Shown in pieces: positions 31,017 to 53,693 of a DNA stretch of 64,000 nucleotides; the first letter of the stretch is position 1; each line of letters begins with the position of its first letter. The position numbers and the translations under genes were made by a program. The stretch covers positions 36,270,001 through 36,334,000 of the forward strand of contig OZ286461.1 of the NCBI GenBank assembly GCA_965644265.1. Reading direction: 5' to 3'. Origin of the DNA: Glycera tridactyla (lineage: Eukaryota). The notes beneath the pieces were generated by a model that saw only the letters and a list, made by a program, of their open reading frames with translations, made no database searches and was not told the origin of the DNA.

Positions 31017-31022
31017 GTGTAT
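31017..31022. repeat. Left target-site duplication GTGTAT
   Basis: Identical hexamer at 53688-53693, directly outside the right TIR. Confidence 0.95.
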
Positions 31023-31084
31023 AGTAGTATAATGGGCACTTTGCGGGCAGACCAGAAGAATAGAGGCACTATACGGGCAAACAT
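31023..31084 (+). repeat. Left terminal inverted repeat (62 bp)
   Basis: AGTAGTATAATGGGCACTTTGCGGGCAGACCAGAAGAATAGAGGCACTATACGGGCAAACAT is the reverse complement of 53626-53687 with 2 transitions. Confidence 0.96.
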
Positions 31085-31237
31085 TTATATAAATAGGTAT
31101 TTGTAATCATCAGACAGGGAATGGGTAAATGTATATAGGAAGTTCCAGATATATGTAATCAACGTATTAAAGGTAGTTACGTACATTCAACGTGGGTTTT
31201 CATACCTCATTACATATGAGGGCTATCTATTCCATAG

Positions 31238-31311
31238 GGTTAGTTAGCTCAATTGGTTAGAGCGTCATCCTAATGAGTTGAAGGTCACAGGTTCGATTCC
31301 TGTACTGACCA
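31238..31311 (+). tRNA. tRNA-Ile(AAT): tRNA-Ile, anticodon AAT (31272-31274), inside the Polinton
   Basis: Acceptor GGTTAGT/ACTGACC plus discriminator A; D stem GCTC/GAGC; anticodon stem TCATC/GTTGA (one T-T mismatch) with loop CTAATGA; T stem ACAGG/CCTGT with loop TTCGATT; A and B boxes intact; TTTT terminator immediately after. Confidence 0.88.
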
Positions 31312-31537
31312 TTTTATAGTTCTGAATAGTGTGAATAGATAATAATAGATGTGGTGTATATTAGTGACTATTTTACATCTTCATTCTACACCATAGTAGG
31401 GAATCCTATATAGAATCTTGATAAAAAGAGTAATATAATATATCATTCATCCCTAATAGCAAACAATATTAGGAGAATATATTATATGCTTTGATGCAAA
31501 ATAGCATAGGAATATATAATATACCCCATAGGTTACC

Positions 31538-31567
31538 TATAAAAGAGCTGACAATTCATTATCATTC
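31538..31567 (+). promoter_or_regulatory. TATA box (TATAAAAG) and Inr (TCATTC) for the zinc-finger gene
   Basis: TATAAAAG at 31538 and TCATTC at 31562, about 26 nt apart; ATG at 31648. Confidence 0.65.
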
Positions 31568-31647
31568 CACCATATGCAGATTCTCTGAGCACTCTTTACC
31601 TTAGGACTGACACTAGGTATATTTGATTATTACACTTTATCACTACG

Positions 31648-32316
31648 ATGGTTCAGACAAGGAGTCGGAGATGTATTTTATGTTATAGAATGTTCCGTGG
31701 CGGTGCTGGGATCTCAATGCATGAGCGAAGATCACATCATAACATTTTGAACTCAAACATAGAAATCAATCAGGAGTTTATGAACAGGGAAAGTTCATTT
31801 TTATCTCAGTATGAGTCTCAATTGACTCCCACAGACATCAGAACGTGTGTTTTGACCAATATGGACTCTCGAAAACAGATGTATATTGTTGATGTGATAA
31901 TCAAGTGGGAGCTGCTCAAGTTGAATGCTATCGCAGCTATACACCCTGTGACCATGTCATGGAGTATGGATTGGTTCACGTGCTATCGTATAAACCAGAT
32001 AGTGGTAGAGTGCATCGAGGTGTTTGCATGTAACAGCCTCCTGGATTGGGCAGGGGATGACGTCAAAAAAGACACTTTTCTCTCCAGTCAAGTTATGAAT
32101 GACTTAATGACACAAGCAAAAATCAATTCATTCAAATCACAGTTTTCTCATAAGATGCATGAAAAAAGATATCATGCAAGTAGACGAATGATGCAATATC
32201 TGTTCACTTACATAGATATCATTGCTAAAACTTCACATTTCAGGGTGATCTTACTATGTAATTTGTCTAAGGCGATTGGACAACTAGATGAACATTCCTG
32301 TTCCAGTTCATGTTAG
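31648..32316 (+). CDS. 222-aa protein with an N-terminal C2H2 zinc finger and an unknown helical domain
   Basis: CILC-YRM-F-RGGAG-I-SM-H-ERRS-H fits C-x2-C-x3-F-x5-hydrophobic-x2-H-x4-H; upstream TATA/Inr. Confidence 0.75.
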   Translation: MVQTRSRRCILCYRMFRGGAGISMHERRSHHNILNSNIEINQEFMNRESSFLSQYESQLTPTDIRTCVLTNMDSRKQMYIVDVIIKWELLKLNAIAAIHPVTMSWSMDWFTCYRINQIVVECIEVFACNSLLDWAGDDVKKDTFLSSQVMNDLMTQAKINSFKSQFSHKMHEKRYHASRRMMQYLFTYIDIIAKTSHFRVILLCNLSKAIGQLDEHSCSSSC

Positions 32317-32427
32317 AATTCGACAAACAAGCTGTTTACTATACAATCAAACAAACAAGCTGTTTGCTATACAAGACTGAACTTTGACAGTGGGGTATAT
32401 TATAGCTGTTGACAGAATTTAGCATAC

Positions 32428-32463
32428 TATATAAACTGACTTCGATTTTGTATTCAATCATTT
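32428..32463 (+). promoter_or_regulatory. TATA box (TATATAAA) and Inr-like TCATTT
   Basis: TATA at 32428, TCATTT at 32458, ATG at 32487. Confidence 0.6.
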
Positions 32464-50942: not shown

Positions 50943-51146
50943 GTGGCTTTCGTTGAAAGGAAAACCTCGACATCACCACCATTGTAGATCTAGGAGTGTA
51001 GGCTACCATGGTCTCTGCCTCGTGAGCCACACTCAGCACCATTCTGACTGTTCCCCGCAAATCTGAAAATCAATTATTTCGATTAGTAGAGTTTTAATAA
51101 CAAGGTGCATACATAGTAAATTTAATATTACATTACGAATACATAC

Positions 51147-51324
51147 TATTCCCCAATATTTTGTTCTGATTTACAGTTGAGCGATACTGACCGACGTGTA
51201 TTCCGCACCCGGCTGTTCTGTAGCCCTCTATGGGAGATCTCTCCGAAGGTTTGGATGTGTGAGAATCATCAGTGTGGGATCTGACATCCTCCTGTTCTCT
51301 GGTGGTTGAGTGAGACCTCTTCAT
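51147..51324 (-). CDS. Putative first exon of the PC4-like gene
   Basis: TATATAAG (51378-51371) and Inr TCATTC upstream; GTATGT donor at 51146; branch-like ACTAAT; TTTTCAG acceptor at 51063. The frame stays open after splicing. Confidence 0.45.
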
Positions 51325-51559
51325 CGTTGAAGTGTATATTAAAGAATGAAAAGTAACTGTCTCTGACTCTCTTATATATACTCGTGTGAGCTAGTATAAT
51401 ATACGAGCGCATATAATATCTATGGGGTGTATAATCTACTGACTACAAAATCTACCTGACTGGAAAATGAACAAGAATAGTATCTCAGGTTTACCAAATG
51501 TATAGTCTATATAGATATAAATTACGTGTCTATCACATCCATGTATGTATACTACTCAC

Positions 51560-52432
51560 CTATTTTTCCAATTGACACACATCAAATGCTAAAAAGTAGT
51601 GTAGCTGTGACAACACATCGAATGTCCACAGCTCATTGTCTGCGGTGTATATCGTGATCAGCACATATTTGAGCACGTCCTGGTATCCAGTATGTGGCTG
51701 CTGCTGTCTCATGGCATTCAGAATCTTACGGAGGTGTGTTGGAGATGCAATTCCATCTATCATTGTGTGGAATTTCCCGGGCAGCTGGTAGTCGTGACCT
51801 TGAAAATAGGTCTCATCAAAGCTGTTCTTGTTGATGTACACTGTGCAGAAGTTGAAATATGTTGCCAGCTCCTCTGTGGTCGGATAACCTCTTATCCGAG
51901 CAGGTTCGACTATCTCGTGCAGCCTTTGTGCATACATCTGGTCGGTGTCTTCCCGCCTGAAAGATATAATCATTTCACGCACAGGTTCGACCACCTGGAC
52001 ACTGAACATCCAGTTCAGTATGAAATTTGTGAACGTATGGATGATGGGAATGTACGCCCTCGGAGAGACACCCATAAGCCTCTTGAAGATTATTATCATC
52101 AATAATATCTCCTTGGATGTGCAGCACCCCTGGTTGAATAGATCGAACAGCACTTCATGGAACATCTCCCTTCCCGAAATCTTGGAGCATACATGGTCCA
52201 TGAATGCATTCACTTTCAGAGTGTAGGGATGTCTCCAATCGAAATGCCAATAGCTCTCCTTCTCTTGCTTTGCAATGCGATGGAAATATGCCTGCACTTC
52301 TTGTGTGGACCACTCCTTCTCCGAATTTATATCCATATTAGGTGGTATTGCAGCTGTGAGGAAATCCTGGTGAAGTTCTATCTCCTCCAGCTGTTCAGTC
52401 ATCACATCGACAGATGTCTCTAGCGTTTCCAT
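51560..52432 (-). CDS. 290-aa helical protein, paralogue of 52727-53515; probably two degenerate Bcl-2-like domains
   Basis: Colinear with its neighbour (SPTHLRKILNAM/SPCHLRKILNVM, VLKYVLIT/VLKYILIT, AFDVC). TATATATA about 65 nt upstream of the ATG. Confidence 0.8.
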   Translation of the reverse strand: METLETSVDVMTEQLEEIELHQDFLTAAIPPNMDINSEKEWSTQEVQAYFHRIAKQEKESYWHFDWRHPYTLKVNAFMDHVCSKISGREMFHEVLFDLFNQGCCTSKEILLMIIIFKRLMGVSPRAYIPIIHTFTNFILNWMFSVQVVEPVREMIISFRREDTDQMYAQRLHEIVEPARIRGYPTTEELATYFNFCTVYINKNSFDETYFQGHDYQLPGKFHTMIDGIASPTHLRKILNAMRQQQPHTGYQDVLKYVLITIYTADNELWTFDVLSQLHYFLAFDVCQLEK

Positions 52433-52726
52433 GGTGGATATTAGGTGGAATGAAAATGAATGAAGTGGAATGGAATAAATACTCATAGAAGATGATATAT
52501 ATATGACTAAAGTCATGCTAAAGATCGAACTTGGCTAGTCTACAAAAGCGTTGATAATATACTCCACAGGGTGAAGTCCGCTCTATATCTCTGTAGCACA
52601 CAAGAGCTGATAAACAAGTGTCACCTTCCGCTAGAGCACTTTAGATGTTTGTTAGTTCAGCTACAGCACCCACCGAGTACACATAATAGGCTGTTCACTG
52701 GATCTACGCAGTGGATGGGATACATA

Positions 52727-53515
52727 TCACACCTCCATCCTACATACATCAAAGGCGATAGATAGATAGAAATGGAATAAATAATCGTAATAGAATGAGC
52801 TATTTTCGGCAGCCGTCAACGTGATTAATATGTATTTCAGCACTTCTTCATATCTTGTATGATATATCTCTCTGTGCATCACATTGAGGATTTTACGAAG
52901 ATGACAGGGGGATTTTACCTGTTCCACCATAATATGAAAAGCACTGTGGAGTTGGAAATCGTACCCCTGAAAGCAGTTTTCAACAAATGGTTCTTTGAGT
53001 ATGTACACACACATCGTATTGAAATAGATGGCCAGGTCCTCCGTTGTCATGTGCCCATTGAGATTGTATGGTCTCATGCATGCATGTATATCCTTGGCAT
53101 ACCTCTTGTCATTCAATTCACGATTGCAAATGATGGTCATGCAAGTCTCAGGATGTGTCGAGCAGTCATTAAGCAGCCATCCGGATATGGTTTGAGTGAA
53201 AGTGTTAATGATACGGATCTGTGCTCGAGGAAACAGTCCAACTAATCTGCTGAATATCAGGACCATCAATAGTACATCTATATGTATGCATTCACCATCT
53301 TTGATCAAGTCAATCATTATCTCAAACAACATATCGTTCCCTTTAATCTTGCCACATACATAGTCAAAATACGAGTTCACTGTATGTGGATCCAACTTAT
53401 TCCAAATATACTTCCGAAAAGTATCCTCATGTAGTGAAGATAACGCTTGGAAATAGGTATTTAGTTCTTCCAATTCCCATTCAGACTCTTCTCCTTCGGA
53501 AGAGACTGAATCCAT
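52727..53515 (-). CDS. 262-aa helical protein, paralogue of 51560-52432; probably two degenerate Bcl-2-like domains
   Basis: Same shared blocks as above; TATATATA at 53580-53573 and a TCA initiator near 53549. Confidence 0.8.
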   Translation of the reverse strand: MDSVSSEGEESEWELEELNTYFQALSSLHEDTFRKYIWNKLDPHTVNSYFDYVCGKIKGNDMLFEIMIDLIKDGECIHIDVLLMVLIFSRLVGLFPRAQIRIINTFTQTISGWLLNDCSTHPETCMTIICNRELNDKRYAKDIHACMRPYNLNGHMTTEDLAIYFNTMCVYILKEPFVENCFQGYDFQLHSAFHIMVEQVKSPCHLRKILNVMHREIYHTRYEEVLKYILITLTAAENSSFYYDYLFHFYLSIAFDVCRMEV

Positions 53516-53625
53516 CCTGCTAGTCTGATGATTCTATTTAATCTGATGTGATAGTTTCCCTCGCCTACATAATATATATAGACATCAGCTGGTTTGCAAT
53601 CAAAGTGTCTGTGTACAACTGGTGG

Positions 53626-53687
53626 ATGTTTGCCCGTATAGTGCCCCTATTCTCCTGGTCTGCCCGCAAAGTGCCCATTATACTACT
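53626..53687 (-). repeat. Right terminal inverted repeat (62 bp)
   Basis: Reverse complement of 31023-31084; ends in ACTACT. Confidence 0.96.
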
Positions 53688-53693
53688 GTGTAT
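53688..53693. repeat. Right target-site duplication GTGTAT
   Basis: Matches 31017-31022. Confidence 0.95.

What the first reader, a model, noticed from the sequence alone, without database searches (positions are those of the whole stretch)
31017..53693. Complete Polinton that appears to carry its own transcription-control and anti-death toolkit
Seen: one TIR/TSD-bounded element encodes, beyond the core genes, a TBP homologue, a PC4-like protein, a C2H2 finger protein, a Pol III tRNA gene and up to five Bcl-2-like domains, with two promoter classes. Established: the usual Polinton core is pPolB, integrase, ATPase, protease and two capsids; TBP-like late factors and Bcl-2 mimics are known from larger DNA viruses (beta/gamma-herpesviruses, Nucleocytoviricota, adenovirus E1B-19K, poxviruses). 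Inference: this is a Polinton lineage with an early programme (host TATA promoters; anti-apoptosis and replication genes) and a late programme switched on by the element's own TBP. I cannot verify whether it has already been described.
Basis: partly seen in the sequence, partly recalled or inferred. Interest (0 to 1): 0.9.

Follow-up and report, generated by a model that had tools for sequence, protein, structure and literature searches.

The report
Endogenous Polinton with TBP-like gene
This is a real virus-like mobile element (a Polinton/Maverick) that carries its own TATA-binding-protein-like gene, a PC4-like gene, one short Bcl-2-like gene and a tRNA gene, but the copy is already damaged, and most of the claimed anti-death genes and the early/late switch could not be confirmed.

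Summary
The element is real. It has 62-nt terminal inverted repeats (60/62 matching) flanked by identical 6-bp target duplications (GTGTAT). It encodes a protein-primed PolB, an rve+chromodomain integrase and a P-loop ATPase. Confirmed accessory genes are a two-repeat TBP homologue (Pfam 7.5e-22; PDB TBPs about 1e-12), a PC4-domain protein (above Pfam's cut-off) and a tRNA-Ile(AAT) gene ending in a T-run. One short ORF is probably Bcl-2-like. Not confirmed: "complete" (PolB has one frame break, the TBP gene one in-frame stop, and no protease is readable), "five Bcl-2 domains" (the D/E paralogue pair shows no Bcl-2 likeness by sequence, profile or predicted fold), the capsid assignments (no tool supports them) and a second promoter class (no shared motif beyond chance). 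The assembly gap lies inside a 150-bp subrepeat array of a 3.5-kb foldback-like block between PolB and the capsid candidate and interrupts no gene. The TBP-like protein has seven intact relatives (46–58% identity), so it is a conserved family, but it sits inside the virion-gene block, not upstream of it. Bcl2 in adintoviruses and TBP in related MELD viruses are already published. Verdict: a new member of a known kind, of moderate interest.

The parts
31017..31022 (.). Left target-site duplication, GTGTAT
   Evidence: Identical 6-mer on both flanks
31023..31084 (+). Left terminal inverted repeat (62 nt)
   Evidence: 60/62 match to the reverse complement of 53626-53687
31238..31311 (+). tRNA-Ile (anticodon AAT) gene, followed directly by a T-run
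   Evidence: ARAGORN; Rfam RF00005, 67.4 bits; TTTT downstream; stable fold, z = -2.9
31648..32316 (+). ORF A, 222 aa, with one N-terminal C2H2-pattern finger; function unknown
   Evidence: Strict C2H2 pattern at residues 9-31, reached by 3 of 2000 shuffles; no Pfam, PDB or PHROGs hit; TATA-like boxes upstream
32484..33929 (+). ORF B, 481 aa, with a Ser/Asp-rich N-terminal half; function unknown; lies upstream of PolB, where adintovirus 'Oncoid' genes lie
   Evidence: No Pfam, PDB or PHROGs hit; no LxCxE and no CxxC; TATA-like box about 56 nt upstream
35105..39336 (+). [quoted passage not shown]
   Evidence: PF03175, 1.9e-53, in the C-terminal part; the N-terminal part is in another frame, with 12 CxxC and 7.9% Cys
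40062..43567 (.). Foldback-like block: about 150-bp subrepeats in one orientation on the left and the opposite orientation on the right, with 99% complementary outer arms and (TGAC)n runs; no gene
   Evidence: the units are absent from the rest of the window
40332..40645 (.). Assembly gap (N; length only estimated) inside the subrepeat array
   Evidence: ORFs across it are X-run artefacts
43812..45149 (-). Candidate major capsid protein, 445 aa (assignment by position and size only)
   Evidence: No hit in Pfam, PDB or PHROGs; highest GC3 of the element, 0.79; two AATAAA 42-46 nt after its stop
45159..45452 (-). Small basic ORF (97 aa), a possible core protein
   Evidence: Lys/Arg-rich translation; no family hit
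45445..45915 (-). Candidate minor capsid (penton) protein, 156 aa (by position only)
   Evidence: No family hit
46060..47199 (-). Integrase: rve catalytic core plus C-terminal chromodomain; intact ORF
   Evidence: PF00665, 2.1e-10; PF00385, 1.4e-8
47280..47714 (-). ORF G, a small protein with hydrophobic, predicted membrane-spanning stretches; its start overlaps the end of the TBP-like gene
   Evidence: Translation; only weak sub-threshold hits
47656..48240 (-). TBP-like gene (two TBP repeats, core only); broken once (one in-frame stop)
   Evidence: PF00352 in both pieces, searched apart (7.5e-22; 6.6e-4); PDB TBPs at 8.6e-13; seven intact relatives, 46-58% identical
48225..48734 (-). ORF H, 169 aa, low-complexity with a basic C-terminus; unknown
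   Evidence: No family hit
48716..49054 (-). ORF F, 112 aa; unknown
   Evidence: No family hit
49089..49799 (-). P-loop ATPase, 236 aa, the candidate A32-like packaging ATPase
   Evidence: Walker A and Walker B regions align to P-loop ATPases; Pox_A32 at 0.006, over the P-loop only
49796..50215 (-). ORF C, a short Bcl-2-like protein that includes the BH1 NWGR motif and has no room for a BH2 region or membrane anchor
   Evidence: PF00452, 6.5e-4, 20.6 bits, below the 31.4 cut-off; 24 of the 25 listed PDB hits are Bcl-2 family members, best 1.6e-3
50616..50942 (-). PC4-like protein, 108 aa (single-stranded-DNA-binding PC4 C-terminal domain)
   Evidence: PF02229, 5.3e-8, 32.7 bits against cut-off 25; PDB PC4 at 3.8e-5; no relatives by word-indexed search
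51560..52516 (-). ORF D, an all-helical protein and paralogue of E; the true start is probably an internal Met that aligns with the start of E
   Evidence: 41% identity to E over 244 aa, 8e-65; alignment; TATA-like box upstream of the internal Met
52727..53515 (-). ORF E, an all-helical protein of unknown fold family; not Bcl-2-like in any test run here
53626..53687 (-). Right terminal inverted repeat
53688..53693 (.). Right target-site duplication, GTGTAT

Best explanation
This is an endogenous insertion of a Maverick/Polinton (adintovirus-type, class Polintoviricetes) in a eukaryotic genome that is probably an animal's. It is about 22.7 kb between its 6-bp target duplications and has begun to decay.

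Shown here:
- The termini and the target duplication.
- Two convergent gene sets. A plus-strand replication arm holds the tRNA, ORF A, ORF B and pPolB, with GC3 about 0.4. A minus-strand arm starts with E, D and PC4 and continues into a compact 6.4-kb block: Bcl-2-like ORF, ATPase, F, H, TBP-like, G, integrase, two small ORFs and the capsid candidate, with GC3 0.51-0.79.
- The TBP-like protein belongs to a small family of intact, core-only, two-repeat proteins. At the four DNA-intercalating phenylalanine positions of canonical TBP the family has: one lost, two kept, one changed to tyrosine.

Inferred:
- When active, the element relies on host RNA polymerase II.
- The arm genes A, B, D and E use ordinary TATA-type promoters.
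- The compact block is read as one or a few long, co-terminal transcripts that end at the AATAAA pair after the capsid candidate.
- The element's own TBP-like factor, made from within that block, reinforces or redirects initiation at element promoters that are not canonical TATA boxes.
- The PC4-like protein binds single-stranded DNA, either as a cofactor of that initiation or as the binding protein of protein-primed replication.
- The short Bcl-2-like protein delays death of the host cell.
- The Pol III tRNA-Ile gene supplements decoding.

In this copy pPolB (one frame break) and the TBP-like gene (one in-frame stop) are broken and no protease is readable, so the copy is most likely inactive.
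For: Identity as a Polinton: TIRs and TSD, pPolB and integrase, P-loop ATPase.
TBP-like gene. Family of seven relatives, all with uninterrupted ORFs, pairwise 50-93% identical, with 54 of 173 columns invariant. That pattern is what a maintained gene shows.
Phenylalanine positions: read from the alignment to yeast TBP chain 1tbp_A at indices 39, 56, 130 and 147 and from alignment A1.
Not a recent host capture: about one third identity to every solved TBP, and no closer to the human chain than to the yeast one.
PC4. Bcl-2-like ORF. tRNA.
Compact block and composition.
TATA-like boxes only in the arms.
AATAAA pattern.
Precedents: Bcl2/IAP in adintoviruses; TBP and tRNA genes in MELD viruses (PMC8502044).
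Against: - No expression data exist here, so every transcription step is inference.
- The genomic context of the seven TBP relatives was not examined (the step was referred), so it is not shown that they sit in Polintons.
- PC4 and D/E have no or almost no relatives. The collection does not hold this genome's own proteins, so that absence is weak evidence.
- The absence of AATAAA from the block is not significant: about 1.6 would be expected by chance.
- The capsid genes are not confirmed by any tool.
- The Bcl-2-like ORF is below Pfam's cut-off and too short for a full Bcl-2 fold.
- The tRNA has a T-T mismatch in its anticodon stem and G at position 37, which may mean it is not a standard working tRNA-Ile.
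Confidence: 0.6

Rival explanations
1. This is a complete Polinton with an early programme (host TATA promoters driving anti-apoptosis and replication genes) and a late programme switched on by the element's own TBP, backed by up to five Bcl-2-like domains.
For: TBP-like, PC4-like and one Bcl-2-like ORF are present. TATA-like boxes lie upstream of A, B, D and E but not upstream of the genes from the ATPase to the capsid candidate. The TBP-like family has an altered set of DNA-contact phenylalanines, which would fit recognition of a different promoter.
Against: The TBP-like gene sits inside the presumed late block. No k-mer is shared upstream of the block genes beyond chance. D/E are not Bcl-2-like by profile or by fold: best Foldseek E about 0.1, TM 0.26 or lower. 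A and B show nothing. The copy is not complete: pPolB and the TBP gene are each broken once, and there is no protease.
Confidence: 0.1
2. Passenger cargo. The TBP-like, PC4-like, Bcl-2-like and tRNA genes are host-derived sequences picked up by this lineage or this copy, with no role in the element's cycle, and they are decaying along with the rest.
For: The TBP gene carries an in-frame stop here. PC4 has no detectable relatives and D/E only three distant ones. ORF C is a truncated Bcl-2 homologue. Accessory content is known to vary among adintoviruses.
Against: Seven TBP relatives keep uninterrupted ORFs at 50-93% mutual identity. The family is only about one third identical to any cellular TBP, so it is not a recent capture. 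The GC3 of the TBP-like (0.56) and PC4-like (0.61) genes matches the element's block and not the arms or flanks, which are about 0.4.
Confidence: 0.15
3. Replication reading of PC4. The PC4-like protein is the element's single-stranded-DNA-binding protein for protein-primed strand-displacement replication, not a transcription cofactor, so there is no TBP+PC4 'transcription toolkit'.
For: Only the ssDNA-binding C-terminal domain of PC4 is matched: query residues 42-96 against chain positions 5-61 of 66. No other candidate DNA-binding protein for replication was identified in the element. From my own knowledge, not tested here: PC4-fold proteins serve as ssDNA-binding proteins in some phages.
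Against: The gene lies on the minus strand next to the block, not in the PolB arm. PC4's best-known role is as a Pol II coactivator (established knowledge). No data here separate the two roles.
Confidence: 0.25
4. Assembly chimera. The left half (low GC3) and the right half (high GC3) come from different loci or elements and were joined wrongly at the gap.
For: The gap lies between the two halves and GC3 jumps from about 0.4 to 0.5-0.8 across it. The window has 12 gaps.
Against: The identical 6-bp TSD (chance about 1 in 4096) and the 60/62 TIR match tie the two ends to a single insertion. The 99% complementary 154-nt arms lie on either side of the gap.
Confidence: 0.05

Closest known systems
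Maverick/Polinton elements, also called adintoviruses (class Polintoviricetes; Starrett et al. 2021, PMC8502044)
   Same: TIRs, a 6-bp TSD, pPolB, an rve integrase and a small P-loop ATPase. Accessory genes lie upstream of PolB. Bcl2-type anti-apoptosis homologues are reported in the family.
   Different: No adenain-like protease is readable. The capsid genes are not recognisable with the libraries at hand. It carries a TBP-like gene, a PC4-like gene and a tRNA gene. The ORFs upstream of PolB lack the LxCxE and paired-CxxC 'Oncoid' motifs.
MELD viruses with TBP and tRNA genes (Starrett et al. 2021, legends of Figs 5 and 6)
   Same: Mid-size polinton-related genomes annotated with a TBP homologue ('homologs of host proteins') and with tRNA genes.
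   Different: Those are reported under 'non-animal eukaryote' datasets. The sequences were not compared here, so whether they are the same TBP lineage is unknown.
Cellular TBP and TBP-related factors (TBPL1/TRF2 type)
   Same: A two-repeat PF00352 fold, about one third identical to canonical TBP. As in the TBP-related factors, the family does not keep all four intercalating phenylalanines. That TRF2 lacks them is from my own knowledge and was not tested.
   Different: It is the core only (about 175-190 aa, no N-terminal tail), is encoded in a mobile element, and has a one-residue deletion at the first phenylalanine position. No phylogeny against the TBPL families was made.
Virus-encoded TBP-like late factors of beta/gamma-herpesviruses and TBP-like genes of Nucleocytoviricota (named from my own knowledge; none came back as a hit)
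   Same: The general idea of a DNA virus bringing its own TBP-like initiator.
   Different: No such viral protein appeared in any search here. The window's protein matches cellular and archaeal TBPs directly by sequence.
PC4/Sub1 (PF02229)
   Same: The C-terminal ssDNA-binding domain is matched above Pfam's cut-off and matches solved PC4 structures.
   Different: The N-terminal 40 residues are unrelated. It is encoded by a mobile element. No relatives were found.
Cellular Bcl-2 family (Bfl-1/A1, BAX) and viral Bcl-2 homologues
   Same: ORF C aligns from about helix 2 to BH1, and the NWGR motif aligns.
   Different: The score is below Pfam's cut-off. The ORF ends about 25 residues after BH1, with no BH2 and no membrane anchor.

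Membership tests
Polinton/Maverick (Polintoviricetes) | Terminal inverted repeats | tested here: met
   62 nt, 60/62 matching
Polinton/Maverick (Polintoviricetes) | 6-bp target-site duplication | tested here: met
   GTGTAT on both sides
Polinton/Maverick (Polintoviricetes) | [quoted passage not shown] | tested here: met
   PF03175, 1.9e-53; the gene is broken once by a change of frame
Polinton/Maverick (Polintoviricetes) | Retrovirus-like (rve) integrase | tested here: met
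   PF00665, 2.1e-10, plus chromodomain, 1.4e-8
Polinton/Maverick (Polintoviricetes) | A32/FtsK-type packaging ATPase | tested here: inconclusive
   Walker A and B regions present. Pox_A32 only 0.006, over the P-loop. PDB hits are generic P-loop proteins
Polinton/Maverick (Polintoviricetes) | Adenain-like cysteine protease | tested here: not met
   No ORF of 55 aa or more outside the assigned genes has a Pfam hit, and no assigned ORF hits a peptidase family. The only unread stretch is the gap, which lies inside a repeat array
Polinton/Maverick (Polintoviricetes) | Double jelly-roll major capsid protein and a penton protein | tested here: inconclusive
   The candidates at 43812-45149 and 45445-45915 have no hit in Pfam, PDB sequences or PHROGs.
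TBP (PF00352) | Two tandem TBP repeats forming the saddle | tested here: met
   Upstream piece 77.4 bits against cut-off 22.9, two stretches. The downstream piece matches profile positions 51-84 of 85. It is colinear with intact relatives. One in-frame stop in this copy
TBP (PF00352) | Four DNA-intercalating phenylalanines of canonical TBP | tested here: not met
   Against 1tbp_A indices 39, 56, 130 and 147, the family has a deletion, F, F and Y
PC4/Sub1 (PF02229) | PC4 C-terminal ssDNA-binding domain above the curated cut-off | tested here: met
   32.7 bits against 25; PDB 4usg at 3.8e-5
Bcl-2 family (PF00452): ORF C | Bcl-2 domain above the curated cut-off, with BH1 and BH2 | tested here: inconclusive
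   20.6 bits against 31.4. 24 of the 25 listed PDB hits are Bcl-2 family members, and BH1 NWGR aligns. There is no room for BH2. The fold was not predicted
Bcl-2 family: ORFs D and E | Sequence, profile or fold similarity to Bcl-2 proteins | tested here: not met
   No PDB or Pfam hit for the sequence or the 5-member profile. hhalign against ORF C gives 1% probability. AF2 model pLDDT 68, pTM 0.70. Foldseek against PDB and BFVD gives no hit at E of 0.001 or lower and TM 0.26 or lower. The model is only moderately confident
Bcl-2 family: ORFs A and B | Sequence or profile similarity to Bcl-2 proteins | tested here: not met
   No Pfam or PDB hit. No similarity to ORF C or to D/E. The fold was not predicted
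C2H2 zinc finger: ORF A | Classical C2H2 spacing and a match to the family profile | tested here: inconclusive
   The spacing pattern is met once, reached by 3 of 2000 shuffles. No Pfam zf-C2H2 hit at E of 0.1 or lower
tRNA (RF00005) | Match to the covariance model, and a Pol III terminator | tested here: met
   67.4 bits against 29; ARAGORN gives Ile-AAT; TTTT directly downstream. There is one T-T mismatch in the anticodon stem

The most novel reading that the evidence does not exclude
A lineage of animal Polintons encodes a self-contained initiation module. It consists of a fast-evolving, core-only TBP paralogue with a remodelled DNA-binding saddle (one intercalating phenylalanine lost, one changed to tyrosine) and a PC4-like cofactor. 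Together they steer host RNA polymerase II to non-TATA promoters of the element. This would be the smallest known DNA virus-like genome with its own TBP-based promoter recognition.
Probability: 0.15. Interest if true: 0.75.

Novelty: new member of a known kind. Interest (0 to 1): 0.42.

Why it matters
How Polintons/Mavericks are transcribed, and whether they run a virus-like gene programme, is largely unknown. A conserved, element-borne TBP-like family with altered DNA-contact residues gives a concrete handle on that question. Its distribution, its promoter partners and its expression can all be read from existing genomes and transcriptomes. The finding also needs correcting: the copy is damaged, the 'anti-death toolkit' shrinks to one short Bcl-2-like ORF, and similar accessory genes are already in the adintovirus literature.

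Tried and rejected
- D/E as Bcl-2-like: rejected after phmmer against PDB, a word-indexed search, an exhaustive HMMER search, profile searches against PDB and Pfam, hhalign against ORF C and AF2 plus Foldseek.
- The first AF2 run, on a 2-sequence alignment, gave pLDDT 36 and was useless. It cost one of the two structure jobs, so the capsid candidate and ORF C could not be folded.
- A and B as Bcl-2-like or as paralogues of D/E: no support.
- 'Oncoid' motifs (LxCxE, paired CxxC) in A and B: absent.
- Protease: not found in any ORF or stop-to-stop segment.
- Capsid genes: no hit in Pfam, PDB or PHROGs.
- Shared late-promoter k-mer: at chance level.
- PC4 relatives: none.
- Exact look-up of the window's proteins: none are in the collection, so copy number could not be counted.
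- Repeat units of the foldback block elsewhere in the window: none, so whether the block is a nested insertion or native is unresolved. No flanking duplication was evident.
- Host identity: not determined. The flanks hold only repeats and gaps, and nothing suggested a human contig.

Full report
OBSERVATION

The gap. The window has 12 runs of N. The run inside the finding, 40332-40645, lies in a 3.5-kb block (about 40062-43567) made of roughly 150-bp subrepeats. Units to the left of the gap and immediately to its right share one orientation, and units further right have the opposite orientation. The outermost 154-nt arms, 40069-40222 and 43407-43560, are 99% complementary. The ORFs that appear to cross the gap consist of X runs and repeat units. 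The gap therefore interrupts no gene, and reading frame across it has no meaning, since the gap's length is only estimated. I did not try to fill it. Three observations tie the two halves to one insertion: the two ends match as inverted repeats, they carry the same target duplication, and the 99% arms straddle the gap.

The boundaries. A local alignment of the left end against the reverse complement of the right end gives a 62-nt inverted repeat, 31023-31084 against 53626-53687, with 60 of 62 matches. The six bases just outside are GTGTAT on both sides. A 6-bp duplication is the Polinton hallmark, and a chance match is about 1 in 4096.

The core genes.
- The plus strand carries a protein-primed PolB (PF03175, 1.9e-53). 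Its N-terminal part, which includes a cysteine-rich region (12 CxxC, 7.9% Cys), is in a different frame from the rest, so the gene is broken once.
- The minus strand carries an intact integrase with rve and chromo domains.
- It also carries a 236-aa P-loop ATPase whose Walker A and B regions align to P-loop proteins. The only specific signal is a weak Pox_A32 match over the P-loop.
- The ORFs in the expected capsid positions (445 aa and 156 aa) match nothing in Pfam, PDB sequences or PHROGs. Their assignment rests on position and size alone.
- No protease is readable. Every stop-to-stop segment of 55 aa or more outside the assigned genes was listed, and the plausible ones were scanned without result.

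'Complete' is therefore not correct. There are two broken genes, pPolB with one frame change and the TBP-like gene with one in-frame stop. One expected gene is missing, and a gene-free foldback block sits between the convergent arms.

The accessory genes.
- TBP. The gene at 47656-48240 (minus strand) matches PF00352 in both of its pieces, which I searched apart (7.5e-22; 6.6e-4 at profile positions 51-84 of 85). It also matches 35 solved TBPs (best 8.6e-13).
- PC4. The ORF at 50616-50942 is above Pfam's cut-off (32.7 bits against 25) and matches solved PC4 C-terminal domains (3.8e-5).
- tRNA. tRNA-Ile(AAT) at 31238-31311 is called by ARAGORN and Rfam (67.4 bits). It has a stable predicted fold (z = -2.9) and is followed directly by TTTT. 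It has one T-T mismatch in the anticodon stem and G at position 37.
- Bcl-2. Only ORF C (49796-50215) has evidence: PF00452 at 6.5e-4, below the cut-off, and PDB hits of which 24 of the 25 listed are Bcl-2 family members (best 1.6e-3), with the BH1 NWGR motif aligned. The ORF ends about 25 residues after BH1, where the ATPase gene starts. It cannot hold a BH2 region or a membrane anchor.
- C2H2. ORF A has one strict C2H2 spacing pattern at its N-terminus, reached by 3 of 2000 proteome shuffles, but no Pfam hit.

The remaining 'Bcl-2-like' candidates. D and E are clear paralogues (41% over 244 aa, 8e-65). E has no PDB hit and no relatives by word-indexed search. An exhaustive HMMER search of 1.84 billion representatives with the D+E profile found three distant relatives. 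The 5-member profile hits nothing in PDB or Pfam. An AlphaFold2 model from that alignment is moderately confident (pLDDT 68, pTM 0.70). It finds no structural neighbour in PDB or BFVD (best E about 0.1, TM 0.26 or lower, no Bcl-2 protein). hhalign of the profile against ORF C, A and B gives probabilities of 1% or less. A and B have no Pfam or PDB hits. 'Up to five Bcl-2-like domains' therefore reduces to one probable, truncated one.

WHAT IT IS AND HOW IT IS BUILT

The element has two convergent arms that meet at the foldback block. The plus-strand arm (tRNA, A, B, PolB) has GC3 of 0.39-0.43. The minus-strand arm starts with E, D and PC4 as separate genes. It then runs into a 6.4-kb block in which ten ORFs overlap or abut, from ORF C through the ATPase, F, H, the TBP-like gene, G, the integrase and two small ORFs to the capsid candidate. 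GC3 there is 0.51-0.79 and is highest in the capsid candidate.

TATA-like boxes (TATAWAW) lie 40-135 nt upstream of A, B, E and the internal Met of D that aligns with the start of E. No gene from the ATPase to the capsid candidate has one.

On the minus strand there is no AATAAA within the block, and two occur 42-46 nt after the capsid candidate's stop. On the plus strand there is one after B and one after PolB. The absence inside the block is not significant by itself, since about 1.6 would be expected by chance.

No k-mer is shared upstream of the block's genes more often than in random windows of the same block. I could not reproduce a second promoter class.

The TBP-like family. Seven clusters of relatives (46-58% identical to the window's upstream piece, 110-190 aa, all with uninterrupted ORFs) were found. 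None carries a name, and all lie on contigs of 13.3 kb or less. They are 50-93% identical to each other (median 61%), and 54 of 173 well-occupied columns are invariant. The window's downstream piece aligns colinearly with them.

An intact relative aligns to yeast TBP over both repeats at about one third identity (my count from the alignment). It is no closer to the human chain (1.5e-11) than to the yeast chain (2.6e-14). Cellular TBP cores are very strongly conserved (established knowledge), so this is not a recent capture from a host.

In that alignment, chain positions 39, 56, 130 and 147 of 1tbp_A are the four phenylalanines that insert into the TATA box (established knowledge; all four are F in the printed chain). 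The Polinton family has a one-residue deletion at the first, F at the second and third, and Y at the fourth. The saddle is thus kept but remodelled. That would fit a changed promoter preference, which is an inference.

MECHANISM (inferred unless stated)

When active, such an element would depend on host RNA polymerase II. Ordinary TATA-type promoters would drive the arm genes. The compact block would be read as one or a few long, co-terminal transcripts. The TBP-like factor is made from within that block, so it cannot be the upstream switch for it. It could reinforce or redirect initiation once the block is on.

PC4-like proteins bind single-stranded DNA. This one could be a cofactor of initiation or the DNA-binding protein of protein-primed replication, and nothing here separates the two roles. 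The short Bcl-2-like protein would delay cell death. The tRNA-Ile gene would supplement decoding, but its atypical anticodon arm leaves that open. This copy is most likely inactive.

COMPARISON WITH WHAT IS KNOWN

Starrett et al. 2021 (PMC8502044) report Bcl2 and IAP homologues in adintoviruses and 'Oncoid' genes upstream of PolB. Their figure legends on MELD viruses from non-animal datasets also list TBP ('homologs of host proteins') and tRNA genes.

A coral polintovirus survey (PMC11131425) mentions TBP, TATA, Bcl, PC4, tRNA and apoptosis nowhere. A 2026 framework preprint (10.64898/2026.06.19.733378) mentions TBP, TATA, Bcl and PC4 nowhere. Full-text searches for Polinton together with TATA-binding protein, TBP or Bcl-2 gave nothing more specific.

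The parts other than PC4 therefore have precedent in the wider group. A conserved TBP-like family with these residue changes, and a PC4-like gene in a Polinton, were not found described in the searchable library. I name the herpesvirus and giant-virus TBP-like factors from my own knowledge only. None came back as a hit, and none was fetched.

LIMITS AND SLIPS

Referred step. I did not look up the DNA around the relatives' genes. As a result, the Polinton context of the TBP relatives is not shown.

Database coverage. The collection does not hold this genome's own proteins, so 'no relatives' for PC4 and D/E is weak evidence of absence.

Slips:
1. The mapping reported rests on the alignment printed.
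2. They stand undeleted and are not repeated here.

VERDICT

This is a genuine Polinton/Maverick insertion that is already decaying. It has a confirmed TBP-like gene from a conserved small family, a confirmed PC4-like gene, a confirmed tRNA gene and one probable short Bcl-2-like gene. The anti-death toolkit and the TBP-driven late switch are not supported as stated. It is a new member of a known kind, of moderate interest.

Noticed in passing
window 31648-39336 against 43812-50942: Codon composition is sharply bimodal within one element. GC3 is 0.39-0.43 for A, B and PolB and 0.51-0.79 for the minus-strand block (0.79 for the capsid candidate). The flanks are about 40% GC. This could reflect modules of different origin or expression-linked codon bias.
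   Followed up: partly
window 40062-43567: A foldback-like block lies between the convergent arms. It has about 150-bp and 263-bp subrepeats in opposite orientations, 99% complementary outer arms and (TGAC)n runs at 43235-43283 and 43546-43602. Its units do not occur elsewhere in the window. Whether it is a nested insertion or native to the element is unresolved.
   Followed up: partly
window 31238-31311: The tRNA-Ile(AAT) has a T-T mismatch in its anticodon stem and G at position 37. As far as I know, tRNAs that read A-starting codons normally have A there, so this may be a diverged or non-standard tRNA.
   Followed up: no
window 35105-39336: The N-terminal region of pPolB holds a long cysteine-rich stretch (12 CxxC, 7.9% Cys) with no family match. 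It may be a zinc-binding insertion in the polymerase.
   Followed up: no
window 47280-47714: ORF G, a small protein with hydrophobic (predicted membrane-spanning) stretches, starts inside the 3' end of the TBP-like gene in another frame.
   Followed up: no
window 33930-35104: A 1.2-kb AT-rich (35% GC) stretch without ORFs lies between ORF B and PolB. It has clusters of TATA-like motifs on both strands at 33962-34060 and an AATAAA at 34080.
   Followed up: no
window 8961-10378, 24482-24688, 28326-28639: The left flank holds host minisatellites: 63/126/189-bp units over 1.4 kb, a 69-bp unit x3 and a 35-bp unit x9. They produce spurious repetitive ORFs.
   Followed up: no
window 1-64000: There are twelve assembly gaps of 128-511 N, and no recognisable host gene or second Polinton fragment in either flank. 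The host could not be identified.
   Followed up: partly
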